A stretch of DNA of 64,000 bases from Salpingoeca rosetta (GCA_033442325.1 JAWQFM010000010.1:1331545-1395544), one strand, 5' to 3'; positions 27,749-33,762 are shown, counted from the first letter of the stretch. Made by a program: numbers and translations. Notes: generated from the letters alone by a model not told the origin.

Positions 27749-28295
27749 CGCCCAGGGTGGTGGTGGTGGTGGTGGTCACTGGTCGATCCTCACACAGGCG
27801 GGAAGTTCAACTCAACACGCGTGACGTGAAGGCTCGTCCCGCTCACTCTGCGGTTGGAGGTGTTGTCACAACTGCGCTGGTGTCAATGCGCTCACTCGCT
27901 CGCTGCCTCCTTTGCCAGTCTTGTCTGGCTTTCTCACGATTATTGTTGAAATCACAAACAATTATCCACAACCGCCTCAAGAGCACCATCAACCACAGCC
28001 ACACACGCCCCCATCAGCACATGTGTCACGCTGTGACTGACTGAATGGACCGACCGACTGGTACTGCTCTGACTGACGCCCCGCACCATCCACGGATTCC
28101 ATCTCAAACAGCAGCTGCACTCACGTACCGCTTGCCCTCCTTTTGGTTGATTTCTTTTCCTCTTTTGTGTTTTCATCTACTTTCTCTTCTTCATCCGTGG
28201 CTCTTCTCTCTTTGCGCAGGCTTTCCCATTTGCCTCCACTCTTGTTGGAGCAGCGTTTCAGCTCCATCGCCCCCCTCCCGGTCCTTGTGTCTTGC

Positions 28296-30858
28296 ATGGT
28301 GGTGGGTCTCCGCTGTAGTTGCCGAAGGATGGTGCCGAGGTTACGCCGCTTACAGCTGCTGTGGCAGCGACGCTGGCGCACCATAGTTGTCATTGTACTG
28401 TGCATCACACTGCTCGCTGCTCTGCGCAGAAACAGATCCGCAAGGTACAATGCGTCCGACGTGCCCGACCTTACAAAGTGCCGAGCACCCAGCTTGGAGG
28501 TGGCACCTCTGATCACCGCATCCCTGATACACGATACAGCGGACGCCGCCGCCTTCCTTGACCTCCACCGCGTGGCCGAGGCCCCCTTCAACGATCTCAT
28601 ATTGTCTGCGTCCAGTGCCCGCAGCGGCGATGCCAACCGCAACCACGCTCGCGCAGATGTGGACCGCAATGCGCTGCGCCCAGTCACGCACAGGCAAACC
28701 CTCGCCCACTGCATTGCGCAGCACTACCTCGGCGCGATCCAGCAGCCCACGTGGTCGCATCCGTCCGTGTGGTTCGCCGCCATCCAGGCTGCTCAGCACG
28801 AGGGTGCAGCAGCACAGCAGCAGCGCGCAGCACGATCCGCACATGCCAAGGACGCCAACGACAACGCGGACAGCATTAGCAGTAGTAGTAGTAGTAGCGA
28901 AGGCGGTACAGCAGCCACCATGGATCAAGTGCGACGCAAGTGGTGGGCCCACATGGTGCAGCTTGCGCGGCTGCACATCCACCAGCAAGCAGACGGCGAT
29001 CCTGCAAGCGAGCAAGGCAAGGTGCTGGAGGTGCCGAGCGGGCTGCCCATCCACGATGAGTACATTTCCTCCCTCGTCAGCGCCCTGCTCATGCCCATGG
29101 ACAGCGATGCGCTCGCTTACTCGGCGCACGTTCCCAAGCACATCAACGTCCACACCACCATCTGCGGGGCATCCCCTGCCACGGCTCGCCGCTGCCGCTC
29201 TGGCCGCCCTATGCTCTCCCCTTCCGCGTCCCTGCAAGCAGCGACCGCCGTCTTCGCCTCGCGCTCCCTCGCCCTCACCAACGTGGCAGACACTTGGCTC
29301 CTGCAGCTGGCGCAGCACGTGCGCGCGGGCGGCGTGGTTGCCTTCCACGACGTCTACTTTGCCGGCGACGACCCCTCCCCGTGCGTGCTGGCAAACGCCC
29401 TGCACTCCCCTGCGGGCGACACCAGCGTCGTGTACGCCACGGAGGCCACCATCGCGTTCTTCCTCGCCCACTTTGATGTGGAGTGGTACCGGGACGTGCG
29501 CGTGTCCTTCCACCCGTCGCTCGCGTGTGAGAAGCGGGAAGTGTTCGCCCTGCTGCGGCGCCGCACCACGCTCCGCCCAGGCATCGCCACACCGCGGCGT
29601 GTGGACCTCACCATCACCTCCCTCCGCGCCATCAAGACGGCCTTGGCAGCAGCCCCGTCGTCCCGGCACCCGTCGCAGTGGCTGCAGCGCTTGTTGGACG
29701 CCGCCTTGCACCACTCGCCAAACGCATGGCCAAACCTGGCACACCGCCCCCACACCACCAACACCAACACCAACACCAACACAAACACAAACACAAACAC
29801 CAACGCCAACAACGACGGAGGTGCTGTGTCCTTGTTCCACGAAGCGTCACGCCCGCGCCGGTGGGCAACGAACGGGCTGTTGCACGACACAATGTCGCAG
29901 CTTGAGGCATTTGACGCCGTGGAGCGGCTCCTCGAAGGGGGCGTGCCCGATGGATGCAACCCAACCAGCGACATTTGCAACATCTTCTTTGTCTGGACGT
30001 CACATCGCGACACGTGGTCCTTCCTGAACAGACTGGCGGTGGAGTCCGCCCTGCGCATCTTCCCGCGTGCGCGCGTGATTATCGTGTCAAACACGCTTCC
30101 CGTCACCTTCTTCAACAGCCTGCAGGCATCGCACCGCGTGTATGTGTGGCGCATCGTGCCCACCCGCCTCGTGCGCGCCGGCGTTGCTGGCGGCAGGTGG
30201 CTGCGCGCTGCCCTGCGTGAGCAAGGCCCACATCTCCCCACGCACCAGAGCGACTTCCTGCGGTACGTCGTGCTGTACAAGTACGGCGGTCTGTTCAGCG
30301 ACACGGACCTGGTGTGGCTGGACGCGTCCCCGCTCGCCCACGCCATTGGCCGAAACTTCCTGGGCAAGATTGACAGCCGGCCCATCTTGGCGCGCTGCCC
30401 CTGGTGCGTTGACAGCACGTGGTACCTTGCCAACGGCGTGCTGCGCTTCCAGGCGCGCCACAAAATGCTTGCAAGTATTCTTGGGCACATTGACACGCTG
30501 CGCTACGACCCAAGTGACCGCCTGGCCATCGGGCCGCACCTTGTCACCAAGACGTTCAACGCCCTGCAGGACCCAAGCGTCATCTTAGTCGACGAGCATG
30601 TGCTGTTCCCCATGTCCGGACCAGATGTCCTGCAGTACATGGACCCACGCCCGCCCCACACGCGCCTGGCGGACCTGCTGACCTCCGCCGCTGTCCATGT
30701 GTTTGAGGCAACGTACAAGGCCGCTCCCTACGCCCCGACGAGCGCAATGCAGCAGCTGCTCGCGCTCACGCCCTGGGTGCAGATTGACCCCGTGTGCGAA
30801 TGTGTCTGGCAGCAAGACGACACCGACACCGACACCAACGAAGATAAGGGTGATGATG

Positions 30859-30892
<34 letters not shown>

Positions 30893-33575
30893 TGGTGGTG
30901 CTGCTGTAGGGGGTGACAGCACGAAGCGCAAGAAGACCAACCTGTGTCTGCCGTACAGTGCAACGGCTCGGTACAGGCAGGGGTCTCGCGACCACCTCGT
31001 GCGCATGTGTGTCAAGATCAGGGGCATCCACAGCGACGCTGATCAGAGCAGCACACCCAACAGCGACAGAAACGAGCGTGCTGCTGGTGATGGTGACAAC
31101 GATGAAGGTGCTGGTGGTGAGGAGAAGAGTCGTGACGGCACGAGCGTGGTTGGCTTGCCTGAGGACGGCGTGCTTGTGCTTGAGGCGCGGCTTGGGCGCG
31201 TGCAGACGGCGTACCAGGCCGCTGACAAGCGCATTGTCGTACCGCTGCACAGAGACATGACGCACACAGAGCTGCTGGAGCTGGCACAGCTGTGGTACGT
31301 GCACGGCGAGGAGTACTGCAACGACCACGTCACCGTGCAGGTGGTGCTTGCCTCGGGCGTGGTGTATGCTGAGGGCGGTGTTGATGTGATGACGCCGTGC
31401 TTTGGCGTCGCAGAGGCGCAGCAGCGGTACATTGGGCCCCCGCTGGCAAAGGGCACGTACACGTGGACAAACGCCGAGCACATGCTGCAGTGCACGCGGT
31501 TCAGCGAGGAGTATGCGGGGCCTGACCCCCTCATGTTCTGGCCGCGCAAGTACCGCAAGCTGGTGGGCGACATGGTGAGTCCTGCCACCGCCAAGTATGC
31601 CTTTGGCTACACGCCCGCGCTCACAGCAGCCAACGGGGCGGGCGAACAGCAGCAACGGCAACAGCCGCGGTACAAGGTTGGCCTGGTGGTGGTGGCAACA
31701 GGCTGGTACTACGCCTTTCTGGACGACTTTGTTGCCAGTGCTGAGGAGTTTTTCATGCCGGGCCACGAAGTGCACTACTTTGTGTTCACGGACAACCGCC
31801 CCTTTGCTGCTGGCCCTGCTGACCGCATGCACATTCTCCGGCAGCCCGTGTACGGGTGGCCCTTTGACAGCATGTTCCGCTACGAGAGCATCCTGCGTCA
31901 GCGGCACCACTTTCGCAACATGGACTACATCTTCATGCTTGACTCGGACATTGTCTTCTCAAACTTTGTTCGCGAGGAGATTCTCGGGGAGATGGTGGGC
32001 GTGACGCAGGCGTTTGCATTTGGCCTGGCGCGCAGCGAGTACCCTCTGGAGAGCAACCCCGCGAGCGTCGCCTATGTGCCACAGAGGTCCACGCCGTGCT
32101 ACTACGCCGGCGGCATCTTTGGCGGCACGGTCGAGGGGGCCGTTCGCTTCCTCCAGCACACGGCGTGGCTCATGGAGTGGGACATTATGCAACAGGTCAG
32201 CGCGGGCCACGACGATGAATCATACCTCAACCGCATCTTCGCGTGGAACCCGCCGGACGTTGTGTTGCCCGCAAGCTACATCTACCCTGAGCCGCCTTGC
32301 GATCGCGCGTGGCAAGCCGGCGGCAGGCGATATGACGGCACGTATCCGCCGCGCATTTTGAATGTGGGGTGTAGGAAGGTGCTGGGCCTGCAGCCGGGGA
32401 TGGGCCGTAAGACGCGCACAGAGGACGCAGGCACGCCGAAGGACTTTATGCTGCGGGAGGCACGCGCCCACGCCGCGGACATGACGCCAGGCACCGCCAA
32501 CGAGCAACAGCAGCAAGAACAGCAGCAGAAACAGCAGCATGGTGGTGAAGGGGCAGAGGATGCATTGCTGTCCACGCCGCTGTGGATGGTATCGTGCATC
32601 GACTCCTTGCCGGATGATCTCGACGACGGTGCGCATGATGACATGTGGGCGGACAGCATTGCCGCCGCACCACGGCGCCTGGCCAACCACACCAGGCACG
32701 CCGGCGTTGTTTATGGCATGAGCAACGCGCTCCTGCAGCGGTTCTGGGCGGCGCGGGCCTCGCAGTTGCACCCGCCCACGCTGCACGTGGTTGCCGTGTC
32801 CCGCTGTGATGCGCAGGCGGTGGCGGCGTTGCTGCAGCTTGTGCAGGCGGATGTGGTGCTGGTCACTGACCCGGGCCTGACGCCAGGGTGGCAGGTGAAC
32901 TTTGGCGTGTGGCGACGCATGCTGCAAGACAACAGTCGGCTGTGGAAGGCAGCGGGGCAGTCTGCAGGCGGTGATGGTGCTGGCGATGACGTGACGGCGC
33001 CGTTGAGGATCGCTGCTGCGTGCCCCTTCCCCAGCAGCAAGTACCGGCAGATGAACCTGGGCACGCGTGCTGTGGGCAATCTGCTGTGCGGGTGGGACAC
33101 GCAGGCTGCATCACACCCGAGCGATGGCCAGCGGGAGCGGGTGCTCGCCACAGACTTCCGCACGTACGTGTGTCGGGCGAAACCGCTGCATGATGTTGAA
33201 GACCACCAGGCGTTTATGGCACTCAAAGCGCCGCTGCTGTCTGCCATGAACAAAATCGGCGCACCTGTGGTGATGGAAGCAGATGCGCGCAGCAACCTTG
33301 GACTGCCCACACGCAGCGGCATTGACACACAACCACGCAGCCGTGGCGGCGGCGCTGCTGGGCGCGGTGGGGACGTGACGGGGAGCTTTGCACGGCGCAC
33401 GATGGCAGCCCTGCGCTCCCTGATGCAATCGGAGGGCGGTGCCGCTGTGGAAGTTGCATCATGTTTCACAGACATGCAGCCGTTTATTGCCGCGCCGGTT
33501 GTTGCGCGCACGTCTGCGAAGATGTGTTGCAGAACACGCTTCCTCGGTATGTGTTTGTCGTATCGAGAGTGCTAG
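28296..33575 (+). CDS. Intronless multi-domain type II membrane glycosyltransferase: TM, possible methyltransferase-like region, GT32 (A4GALT/A4GNT-like), GT6 (ABO/GBGT1/GGTA1-like), unknown C-terminal domain
   Basis: Single open frame; first ATG 28296, alternative 28329. TM WRTIVVIVLCITLLAAL. GT32 at ~29980-30720: IFFVWTS, AVESA, HQSDFLRYVVLYKYGGLFSDTD, LANGVLRF, GPHLVT. GT6 at ~31670-32300: KVGLVVVATGWY, SAEEFFMPGHEVHYFVFTD, DYIFMLDSD, YYAGGIFGG, DDESYLNR, YIYPE. Confidence 0.92.
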
Positions 33576-33659
33576 CCGGGCTGCTTTGCTCCTTTGCTTG
33601 CTCACATGTCGTGCAGCTTGTTCTGTGCTGTTCTTTATGTTAGCTCGATTTCAGCTTGT

Positions 33660-33762
<103 letters not shown>

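What the first reader, a model, noticed from the sequence alone, without database searches (positions are those of the whole stretch)
28296..33575. One-polypeptide glycan assembly line: GT32 fused to an ABO/Forssman-type GT6
Seen: one uninterrupted ORF with an N-terminal TM anchor, a GT32 domain with intact SD-x-x-R and DxD (DTD, 30300-30308), and a full GT6 domain, separated by low-complexity linkers (TN repeats, D/S/N, poly-Q). Known: in vertebrates A4GALT (GT32) and GBGT1/ABO (GT6) are separate single-domain Golgi enzymes acting on globo-series and blood-group glycans. GT6 has a patchy distribution, mainly vertebrates, bacteria and some phages. Glycosyltransferases are required for S. rosetta rosette development. 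Inference: a tandem enzyme building a blood-group- or Forssman-like surface glycan in a unicellular relative of animals. I do not know this architecture from a characterised protein.
Basis: partly seen in the sequence, partly recalled or inferred. Interest (0 to 1): 0.85.

Follow-up and report, generated by a model that had tools for sequence, protein, structure and literature searches.

The report
Choanoflagellate multi-domain GT32–GT6 glycosyltransferase
This is a real, transcribed, intron-free gene for a 1759-residue membrane-anchored enzyme that joins an A4GALT-like and an ABO-like sugar transferase (plus three more modules) in one chain; the layout is shared by a small uncharacterised protist family, so it is an interesting variant of known enzymes, not a new kind of system.

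Summary
An uninterrupted ORF (ATG 28296, stop 33575, + strand) encodes a type II membrane protein. It has a GT32 domain with DTD at 30300-30308 and a GT6 domain with DSD, the ABO Glu303 equivalent, and the 'AGG' GalNAc-type donor code. Three stranded RNA-seq runs cover the whole ORF in sense with no splice joints.

- a choanoflagellate-only N-terminal extension;
- a conserved Cys-containing beta-sandwich between the two transferases;
- a C-terminal GT-A-fold domain, a degenerate relative of B4GALNT1-like (GT12) domains.

The architecture is not unique. About eight to twelve 50%-identity clusters share GT32-sandwich-GT6-C-term, among them a Salpingoeca infusionum transcript. Other GT6 fusions (GT6+GT12-like, GT11+GT2+GT6, GT31+GT6) are common in metagenomes. 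The same genome holds an old paralogue whose GT6 domain has lost its catalytic motifs.

The family's GT6 domains form one clade, sister to GT6+GT12-like fusions and not to vertebrate ABO/GBGT1. The 'blood-group/Forssman' product is unproven: donor GalNAc is predicted, the acceptor is unknown, and published UEA-I staining of S. rosetta is negative.

Verdict: new variant of a known kind, moderate interest.

The parts
28296..33575 (+). Complete coding sequence, 1759 aa plus stop, with no intron detected
   Evidence: ORF list and translation. Stranded RNA-seq X16-X18 covers 28284-33655 in sense with no joints. The Atlas holds the identical 1759-aa protein.
28296..28430 (+). Basic cytosolic tail (aa 1-28) and single transmembrane anchor (aa 29-43): type II topology
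   Evidence: Kyte-Doolittle maximum of 2.39 at aa 27-43. The tail has 9 K/R and 0 D/E.
28473..29930 (+). N-terminal luminal extension. Its conserved core is aa 319-450 (nt 29250-29645). It occurs only in the choanoflagellate-type members and the paralogue. Possibly a degenerate class I methyltransferase-like fold.
   Evidence: Alignments A1 and A4. The paralogue is 64% identical over the core. The Atlas feature search points to SAM methyltransferases at 0.85-0.88, which is a lead only. No Pfam or PDB sequence hit.
29757..29804 (+). (TN)8 low-complexity linker, lineage-specific
   Evidence: Reads were skipped at this repeat.
29958..30800 (+). GT32 catalytic domain, A4GALT/A4GNT-like, with S-D-x-x-R (nt 30249) and DxD = DTD (nt 30300-30308)
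   Evidence: PF04488 at 38.6 bits. Profile hits to plant and rotifer 'alpha 1,4-glycosyltransferase' proteins at E 2e-27. hhalign 99.9% probability, E 6e-36, 260 columns. D669 and D671 are invariant in the family.
30801..31646 (+). Conserved Cys-containing middle module (predicted Ig-like beta-sandwich) with two lineage-specific low-complexity inserts, including (SN)5 at 30861-30890
   Evidence: Invariant Cys, Pro and Asn-Asp columns in 10 sequences. AF2 model: mean pLDDT 61, core 75-92, all-beta. VIA-align best Z is 8.8 (B4GALNT1 aa 137-260); the remaining matches are generic sandwiches at Z about 7.
31647..32393 (+). GT6 catalytic domain with DxD = DSD (nt 31941-31949), donor-code tripeptide AGG (nt 32106-32114), Glu1308 = ABO Glu303 (nt 32217-32219), and Gln1238 at the ABO His233 position
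   Evidence: PF03414 at 133 bits. phmmer to ABO GTA/GTB at 1e-27, BoGT6a at 2.6e-27 and alpha3GalT at 3e-23, with alignment. Motif table across 152 GT6 domains.
32493..33530 (+). C-terminal GT-A-fold module, a degenerate GT12/GT2-like (B4GALNT1-like) domain that is probably non-catalytic
   Evidence: AF2 model: pLDDT 72.8, pTM 0.77. VIA-align Z 13.7 to human B4GALNT1 aa 272-485; 101 chains reach Z>=8, and the 50 listed matches are GT-A or NDP-sugar transferase folds. Foldseek E 1e-4. hhalign 87% probability, E 3.7e-6, to the GT2 domain of sister GT6-GT2 fusions, which itself hits B4GALNT1 at 2.8e-29. The DDD motif is reduced to a single Asp.
33662..33761 (.). (GT)n microsatellite just downstream of the stop codon; not part of the protein

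Best explanation
The gene encodes a type II membrane protein of the secretory pathway, most likely Golgi. Its large luminal part is a chain of five modules:
- a lineage-specific N-terminal extension;
- an A4GALT/A4GNT-like GT32 retaining alpha-glycosyltransferase;
- an Ig-like beta-sandwich;
- a metal-dependent GT6 retaining alpha-1,3-transferase whose donor-code tripeptide (AGG) predicts UDP-GalNAc;
- a C-terminal degenerate GT12-like GT-A domain that probably no longer catalyses.

Shown: domain identities, intact catalytic motifs in GT32 and GT6, sense transcription without splicing, conservation of the whole layout in a protist family, and a single origin of the family's GT6 domain.

Inferred:
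- Both active domains work on the same luminal glycan. Characterised members of both families cap terminal beta-galactosides or beta-GalNAc, at O4 and O3 respectively.
- The sandwich and the pseudo-GT domain act as spacers or as acceptor-holding modules.
- The family arose when a GT32 plus sandwich unit was added in front of an older GT6+GT12-like two-domain enzyme, whose GT12-like domain then decayed.
For: Domain identity:
- Pfam hits above the curated cut-offs for both domains.
- ABO and BoGT6a alignments show DxD, the Glu303 equivalent and AGG. AGG is the experimentally decoded 'A' (GalNAc) motif (PMC5377540).
- The GT32 profile is homologous over its full length to PF04488+PF04572 alpha-1,4-glycosyltransferases.
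- One TM segment with a positive-inside tail.

Expression:
- RNA-seq from three stranded runs covers 26-29 of 30 bins in sense. There are no joints and no internal clusters of starts or ends.

Conservation and history:
- Seven full-length proteins share the GT32, middle, GT6 and C-terminal modules, with invariant catalytic residues. One is a complete ORF on a S. infusionum transcript.
- Local HMMs extend the family to P0024, P0025, P0027 and several fragments.
- The family's GT6 clade has 100/99 support. Its sister group is GT6+GT2 fusions, at 97/87.
- The C-terminal fold and its remote homology to B4GALNT1-like domains.
Against: - No biochemical data exist for any member.
- RNA depth is low (1-17x). 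Short reads cannot prove that one molecule spans both domains.
- Reads were skipped at three low-complexity repeats, so a small in-frame intron there is not strictly excluded.
- Acceptor specificity cannot be read from the sequence. The ABO His233 position is Gln, and the usual 'HDE' before the catalytic Glu is 'DDE'.
- PF04572 (Gb3_synth) does not score on this protein itself.
- The paralogue keeps its GT32 domain under constraint while its GT6 motifs are gone. So the GT32 part can apparently be useful without an active GT6 partner, which weakens the idea of obligate coupling.
- The methyltransferase-like reading of the N-terminal extension rests on a sub-threshold feature search only.
Confidence: 0.6

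Rival explanations
1. It is a co-polymerase. Like LARGE1, EXT1/2 or chondroitin synthases, the two active GT domains alternate to build a repeating alpha-linked disaccharide polymer for the extracellular matrix, rather than capping a glycan once.
For: Two-GT-domain fusions in animals and bacteria are often polymerases (established knowledge; LARGE1 and K4CP appear among the fold matches). The extra beta-sandwich and pseudo-GT modules could hold a growing chain.
Against: From established knowledge of the families, all characterised GT6 and A4GALT-type GT32 enzymes add a single sugar to beta-Gal or beta-GalNAc acceptors. An alternating polymer would need each domain to accept the other's alpha-linked product, which is unknown for either family. 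The paralogue retains GT32 without an active GT6.
Confidence: 0.12
2. Only one domain is catalytically relevant. The protein is effectively a single-activity transferase, and the other GT domain serves as a lectin-like or scaffolding module, as pseudo-GT domains do in other multi-domain enzymes.
For: The C-terminal GT12-like domain has clearly decayed while being retained. The paralogue's GT6 has decayed in frame while the ORF is kept. Domain decay with retention therefore happens in this family.
Against: In the window's protein, and in all full-length relatives, both DxD motifs, the GT32 S-D-x-x-R and the GT6 catalytic Glu are invariant. This argues for selection on both active sites.
Confidence: 0.15
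3. It is a three-step assembly line. The C-terminal GT12-like domain is still an active beta-GalNAc/Gal transferase, so the chain makes a globo/Forssman-like trisaccharide (alpha4-cap, beta-GalNAc, alpha3-GalNAc) on one polypeptide.
For: The three GT modules have their nearest characterised relatives in A4GALT, B4GALNT1 and ABO/GBGT1, which in animals include glycosphingolipid enzymes. One Asp survives at the DxD position.
Against: The DDD motif is reduced to one Asp, and its position differs between members. The beta2 Asp ('VVVVD') is lost in the choanoflagellate members. There is no Pfam or PDB sequence hit.
Confidence: 0.08

Closest known systems
Vertebrate GT6 enzymes (ABO GTA/GTB, GBGT1 Forssman synthase, GGTA1 alpha3GalT)
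   Same: Same Pfam family. DxD metal motif, catalytic Glu (ABO E303) and the YY-x-GG-x-FGG donor loop, with AGG as in non-primate A transferases. Type II membrane orientation.
   Different: Here the GT6 domain is internal to a 1759-aa five-module chain. The ABO His233 position is Gln, as in alpha3GalT, and 'HDE' is 'DDE'. In the tree it is not sister to the vertebrate clade (AU p 0.042 against an exclusive clade).
Bacterial GT6 (Bacteroides ovatus BoGT6a, PDB 4AYJ/4AYL)
   Same: Similar sequence distance (E 2.6e-27). AGG-type GalNAc code occurs in Bacteroides A-type genes.
   Different: BoGT6a-type enzymes have NxN and are metal-independent single-domain proteins (PMC3961637). This protein keeps DxD and is multi-domain.
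A4GALT (Gb3 synthase) / A4GNT and plant 'alpha 1,4-glycosyltransferase family' proteins (GT32, PF04488+PF04572)
   Same: Full-length homology of the catalytic domain (hhalign 99.9%, 260 columns). DxD = DTD and the H-x-S-D-x-x-R motif are conserved.
   Different: About 22-31% identity. The Pfam Gb3_synth model does not score on this protein. It is fused to other modules. Donor and acceptor are unknown.
Human B4GALNT1 (GM2/GD2 synthase, GT12; PDB 9H6J)
   Same: Best structural match of the C-terminal module (Z 13.7, 179 residues, rmsd 3.0) and also of the middle sandwich (Z 8.8, aa 137-260). The sister GT6+GT2 fusions hit it by sequence at 2.8e-29.
   Different: No direct sequence hit from the window's domain. 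The DDD motif is degenerate. The two matching pieces are separated here by the GT6 domain.
Bi-domain glycosyltransferases (LARGE1 GT8+GT49, EXT1/2 GT47+GT64, K4CP/CHSY)
   Same: Two GT-A catalytic domains on one type II polypeptide. The principle of coupling consecutive additions.
   Different: Different GT families. Those are co-polymerases combining a retaining and an inverting step. Here both active domains are retaining alpha-transferases of capping-type families.

Membership tests
CAZy GT6 / Pfam PF03414 | Profile match above the curated cut-off | tested here: met
   127.5-133 bits against a cut-off of 25. It is the only locus in the genome above cut-off.
CAZy GT6 / Pfam PF03414 | DxD metal-binding motif (ABO D211-V-D213) | tested here: met
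   D1216-S-D1218 aligns to ABO DVD. Both Asp are invariant in the family.
CAZy GT6 / Pfam PF03414 | Catalytic Glu (ABO E303 / alpha3GT E317) | tested here: met
   E1308 aligns to E303. 'DE' is kept in nearly all of the 152 domains.
CAZy GT6 / Pfam PF03414 | Donor-determining tripeptide (ABO 266-268) | tested here: met
   A1271-G-G. AGG is decoded as A/GalNAc-specific in PMC5377540. This is a prediction only.
CAZy GT6 / Pfam PF03414 | Conserved C-terminal Lys (alpha3GT K359) that binds the UDP diphosphate | tested here: inconclusive
   R1360-K1361 are invariant in the family, but the Pfam and PDB alignments end before this point.
CAZy GT6 / Pfam PF03414 | Retaining alpha-1,3 transfer of Gal/GalNAc to a beta-Gal/GalNAc acceptor | not testable with these tools
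   Needs an enzyme assay.
CAZy GT32, A4GALT/A4GNT branch (PF04488 + PF04572) | PF04488 match above cut-off with DxD | tested here: met
   34.1-38.6 bits against a cut-off of 23. DTD at aa 669-671.
CAZy GT32, A4GALT/A4GNT branch (PF04488 + PF04572) | PF04572 (Gb3_synth) C-terminal region | tested here: inconclusive
   No Pfam hit on this protein. Relatives P0005 and P0027 give faint hits. Profile-profile alignment covers that region with 99.9% probability.
CAZy GT32, A4GALT/A4GNT branch (PF04488 + PF04572) | alpha-1,4 Gal/GlcNAc transfer to a beta-Gal acceptor | not testable with these tools
   Needs an enzyme assay.
CAZy GT12 / B4GALNT-like (C-terminal module) | GT-A fold | tested here: met
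   Z 13.7 to B4GALNT1; 101 chains reach Z>=8, and the 50 listed matches are GT-A or NDP-sugar transferase folds.
CAZy GT12 / B4GALNT-like (C-terminal module) | Sequence-level homology | tested here: inconclusive
   No Pfam or PDB hit. hhalign gives 87% probability, E 3.7e-6, to GT2 domains of sister fusions, which hit B4GALNT1 at 2.8e-29.
CAZy GT12 / B4GALNT-like (C-terminal module) | DxD (DDD) motif after beta4 and Asp after beta2 | tested here: not met
   The window has T-D-P where GT12-like relatives have D-D-D. The beta2 Asp is replaced ('VVYGM').
Bi-domain (two active GT) enzymes | Two catalytically competent GT domains on one transcript and polypeptide | tested here: met
   Motifs are intact in both domains. 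One ORF with continuous sense RNA coverage. The relative P0002 is a single transcript ORF. Activity itself was not tested.

The most novel reading that the evidence does not exclude
The closest unicellular relatives of animals carry, on one polypeptide, relatives of three enzyme families that in animals include the glycosphingolipid enzymes A4GALT, B4GALNT1 and Forssman synthase GBGT1 (and the blood-group transferase ABO). Under this reading the chain makes a globo/Forssman-like alpha-GalNAc-capped glycan. The 'vertebrate' ABO-type chemistry would then predate animals and began as a fused assembly line that was later split or lost.
Probability: 0.08. Interest if true: 0.75.

Novelty: new variant of a known kind. 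Interest (0 to 1): 0.45.

Why it matters
GT6, the ABO blood-group family, has a puzzling distribution. Its origin in vertebrates has been ascribed to horizontal transfer (PMC3516806, PMC3961637).

An intact, DxD-type, GalNAc-coded GT6 is expressed in a choanoflagellate and embedded in a conserved multi-GT chain. This gives a tractable non-vertebrate eukaryotic system for asking what GT6 enzymes do outside vertebrates and bacteria, and how multi-domain transferases couple steps. Gene knockout is available in S. rosetta (bioRxiv 10.1101/2024.07.13.603360).

The exhaustive search also shows that GT6 is far more widespread (about 2500 clusters at 50% identity) and far more often fused to other GT domains than the older literature states.

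The finding does not by itself change the picture of ABO evolution. The tree places this family with metagenomic GT6+GT12-like fusions, not next to vertebrates.

Tried and rejected
- **GT6 domain alone, word-indexed search.** The search for homologous proteins gave nothing. This is a limit of the word filter and not evidence of absence; the exhaustive HMMER search found 2503 clusters.
- **Sequence searches of the other modules.** PDB and Pfam searches of the N-terminal, middle and C-terminal modules gave no meaningful hits. A single-sequence PDB search of the GT32 domain gave only a weak Och1 hit at E 0.58.
- **Atlas feature search of the middle module.** No usable hit.
- **Brew et al. 2010 (PMC2988317).** This paper would name the 'protozoan' carrying a GT6, but it is not held. 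I could not establish whether choanoflagellates are the 'two unicellular eukaryotic species' mentioned in PMC3961637.
- **Taxon names for the metagenomic family members.** None could be obtained. Only S. infusionum is named.
- **Assembly or annotation artefact, or chance ORF.** Rejected on ORF statistics, RNA coverage and conserved homologues.
- **Low-complexity linkers as retained introns.** No splice joints were seen, although reads are skipped inside the three repeats, so this is unlikely rather than excluded.
- **Exclusive sister relation of this GT6 to vertebrate GT6.** Marginally rejected (AU p 0.042).
- **Not used.** Complex prediction was not used, because no protein-protein binding is claimed.


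Full report
**1. Observation**

The + strand carries an open frame from 28143 to 33575. Its first ATG is at 28296, which gives 1759 residues. At the local base composition, the chance of 1810 codons without a stop is about 7e-26. GC rises from about 0.52-0.56 in the flanks to 0.60-0.67 inside the ORF.

The only strongly hydrophobic stretch is aa 29-43. It follows a tail with nine Lys/Arg and no acidic residue. This is a type II (N-in) anchor, with the rest of the protein in the lumen.

Pfam places two domains above their curated cut-offs:
- Gly_transf_sug (PF04488) at aa 581-675;
- Glyco_transf_6 (PF03414) at aa 1124-1330.

**2. Transcription**

Three stranded RNA-seq runs of the same species label (X16-X18, raw reads) were laid on 27900-33655. 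They cover 26-29 of 30 bins. Almost all pairs have the first mate on the minus strand, which in the usual stranded libraries means + sense RNA. Depth is 1-17x and rises toward the 3' end. No joints, no indels and no internal clusters of starts or ends were seen.

Reads are skipped at three low-complexity repeats (28868-28906, 29742-29817, 30849-30906). A short in-frame intron there cannot be strictly excluded, and short reads cannot prove a single molecule.

Independent support comes from a relative, P0002. It is a complete 1590-aa ORF on one Trinity transcript of Salpingoeca infusionum. The ESM Atlas also holds the window's 1759-aa sequence letter for letter.

**3. The GT6 domain**

phmmer against PDB sequences gives:
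- ABO GTA/GTB at about 1e-27;
- Bacteroides BoGT6a at 2.6e-27;
- bovine alpha3GalT at about 3e-23.

Using the printed alignment and ABO numbering (chain index + 61), the key positions map as follows:
- D1216-S-D1218 is the DxD motif (ABO 211-213).
- E1308 is ABO Glu303.
- A1271-G-G occupies ABO 266-268.
- Gln1238 stands where ABO has His233.

AGG at 266-268 was shown experimentally to confer A (GalNAc) specificity. It is the motif of pig, dog, cow, horse and frog A genes and of bacterial A-type genes (PMC5377540). The DxD motif, in contrast to the NxN of most bacterial GT6, goes with metal dependence (PMC3961637).

The domain is therefore predicted to be a metal-dependent alpha-1,3-GalNAc transferase. 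The acceptor cannot be read from the sequence.

**4. The GT32 domain**

A single-sequence PDB search was uninformative. A profile of ten family members (A7) did find single-domain proteins from plants and rotifers at E down to 2e-27. These are annotated 'alpha 1,4-glycosyltransferase' or 'lactosylceramide 4-alpha-galactosyltransferase-like', and all carry PF04488+PF04572.

Profile-profile comparison gives 99.9% probability and E 6e-36 over 260 of 283 columns. The match includes the H-x-S-D-x-x-R and YGG-x-Y-x-D-T-D motifs. The domain thus belongs to the A4GALT/A4GNT branch of GT32. The Pfam Gb3_synth model itself does not score on this protein.

**5.

An alignment of seven full-length relatives (A1) shows three more conserved blocks.

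(a) *N-terminal extension (aa ~60-545).* It is present only in the window, in P0001 (marine metatranscriptome), in P0002 (S. infusionum) and in the paralogue. Its conserved core is aa 319-450. The Atlas feature search points to class I SAM methyltransferases at 0.85-0.88, below the tool's own reliability line. A Gly-rich SAM loop is not conserved. I treat 'degenerate methyltransferase-like fold' as a lead only.

(b) *Middle module (aa 836-1117).* It has invariant Cys, Pro and Asn-Asp positions in all members. The AF2 model is all-beta, with mean pLDDT 61 and a core of 75-92. VIA-align gives generic Ig-like sandwiches at Z about 7. The best match is human B4GALNT1 aa 137-260 at Z 8.8.

(c) *C-terminal module (aa 1400-1745).*
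- The AF2 model has pLDDT 72.8 and pTM 0.77.
- VIA-align gives Z 13.7 to the catalytic domain of human B4GALNT1 (aa 272-485). 101 chains reach Z>=8; the 50 listed matches are GT-A glycosyltransferases or NDP-sugar nucleotidyltransferases. Foldseek agrees.
- The acidic motifs are degenerate. The GT12/GT2 'DDD' is reduced to a single Asp, whose position differs between members (T-D-P in the window). The beta2 Asp is lost in the choanoflagellate members.
- I read this module as a retained pseudo-glycosyltransferase domain.

**6. Distribution of the architecture**

A length-matched search found six clusters with PF04488+PF03414. The exhaustive HMMER search with the GT6 profile found 2503 clusters at E<=1e-3 and 264 at E<=1e-30.

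Local HMMs of each module show the full GT32-middle-GT6-C-terminal layout in P0002-P0006, P0024 and P0025. P0027 has a shorter version, and there are several fragments. Apart from S. infusionum, all members are unnamed metagenome or metatranscriptome sequences. One of them lies on a 45-kb contig where Arf is called as two adjacent partial genes (possibly intron-split, hence eukaryotic).

Other GT6 fusions are frequent:
- GT11+GT2+GT6 (P0119);
- GT2+GT6 (P0075, P0088);
- GT31+GT6 (P0092);
- GT6+GT6+GT2 (P0028);
- GT6 followed by a GT2 domain (P0037, P0039, P0040, P0043, P0045).

So 'GT6 in a multi-GT polypeptide' is a common theme, and GT32-GT6 is one conserved version of it. Searches of the held literature found no description of this architecture. 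PMC3961637 only remarks that GT6 genes occur 'in two unicellular eukaryotic species'.

**7. Phylogeny and history**

The tree was built in IQ-TREE (LG+C20+F+G4 by PMSF) from 66 GT6 domains.
- The family forms one clade with support 100/99.
- With 97/87 support it groups with the GT6+GT2 fusions.
- The vertebrate clade is anchored by a catfish GBGT1-like and a frog ABO-like protein and lies elsewhere.
- Forcing family plus vertebrates into one clade costs 23 log-likelihood units (AU p 0.042), a marginal rejection.

The GT2 domain of the sister fusions is B4GALNT1-like (E 2.8e-29). It aligns to the window family's C-terminal module with 87% probability (E 3.7e-6, 171 columns).

The most economical history is this. 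An ancestral GT6+GT12-like two-domain enzyme acquired a GT32 plus sandwich unit at its N-terminus. The GT12-like domain then lost its catalytic motifs. In choanoflagellates a further N-terminal extension was added.

**8. Paralogue**

PF03414 scores above cut-off at only this locus in the 55.4-Mb genome. PF04488 revealed a second long ORF on contig C36 (L004, 1961 codons).

That ORF shares the N-terminal extension (64% identity), GT32 and the middle module (71%). Its GT6 region differs:
- it is interrupted by very long poly-Q and low-complexity inserts;
- it has D-A-A in place of DxD;
- it has 'DDVT' in place of 'DDES';
- it scores below the Pfam cut-off;
- the protein ends without the C-terminal module.

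Synonymous divergence is about 1.1 over most of the gene but 0.10 over the first half of GT32. This indicates an old duplicate with a recent gene-conversion tract. dN/dS is about 0.2 throughout. GT32 function is therefore kept without an active GT6 partner, which tempers the idea that the two activities are obligately coupled.

**9. What the product might be**

Characterised A4GALT/A4GNT-type and GT6 enzymes all act on terminal beta-Gal or beta-GalNAc, at O4 and O3 respectively (established family knowledge). A fused enzyme could therefore decorate one glycan terminus with two alpha-linked sugars.

The 55.4-Mb size is consistent with S. rosetta as I recall it, but the name was not verifiable. 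Wild-type cells show:
- faint cell-body staining with DBA, SBA and VVL (GalNAc);
- patchy cytoplasmic staining with GSL-I;
- no staining with UEA-I (alpha-Fuc) or ECL (LacNAc).

This is compatible with some alpha-GalNAc epitopes. It speaks against a bona fide H/A blood-group structure. GT11-like matches in the genome are marginal. The link to rosette development is untested; the two glycosyltransferase genes identified there are different genes.

**10. Verdict**

This is a new variant of known kinds, a multi-domain Golgi-type glycosyltransferase built from GT32, GT6 and a decayed GT12-like domain. It belongs to a small conserved protist family and is of moderate interest.

Noticed in passing
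L004:2845-8730 (-) = G000:C36:397845-403729: An old paralogue (1961-codon ORF, first Met at codon 161). It has the same N-terminal extension, GT32 and middle module. Its GT6 is degenerate: DxD is D-A-A, the catalytic Glu is lost, and there are huge poly-Q/poly-N inserts. It has no C-terminal module. dS is 0.10 over the first half of GT32 against about 1.1 elsewhere, which suggests a gene-conversion tract.
   Followed up: partly
P0119 (1062 aa, metagenome): A single polypeptide with GT11 (alpha-1,2-fucosyltransferase family), GT2 and GT6 (DAD, AGG) domains. On paper this is a candidate complete H-plus-A blood-group assembly line in one chain. Its organism is unknown.
   Followed up: no
P0037, P0039, P0040, P0043, P0045 (metagenome, 635-727 aa): GT6 followed by a B4GALNT1-like (GT12) domain (profile to human B4GALNT1, E 2.8e-29). 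This is the sister clade of the window's family and the likely ancestral two-domain unit.
   Followed up: partly
P0028, P0031, P0038 (about 1190-1290 aa, metagenome): These proteins carry two GT6 domains in tandem. In P0028, which also has a GT2 domain, both copies lack an intact DxD. P0031 and P0038 keep DxD in both copies and have unusual donor-code tripeptides (HAT, HGS/HGT).
   Followed up: no
window 33662-33761: A (GT)n microsatellite of about 50 units lies 87 nt downstream of the stop codon.
   Followed up: yes
model m0b4a1d37d5de and m9bcc661bf992 (window aa 830-1120 and 1400-1745): The middle sandwich and the C-terminal GT-A module both have human B4GALNT1 as their top structural match, on adjacent segments of that enzyme (aa 137-260 and 272-485). 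In the window they are separated by the GT6 domain. This may hint that GT6 sits inside an ancestral B4GALNT-like unit. The sandwich match is only slightly above background.
   Followed up: partly
L001:1-301 (JGI metagenome contig Ga0208629_100091): Next to a family member (P0014) lies a 1290-aa gene with GT15 (Glyco_transf_15) and Nucleotid_trans domains, another multi-domain glycosylation enzyme on the same 45-kb contig. Arf is called as two adjacent partial genes there, possibly intron-split.
   Followed up: no
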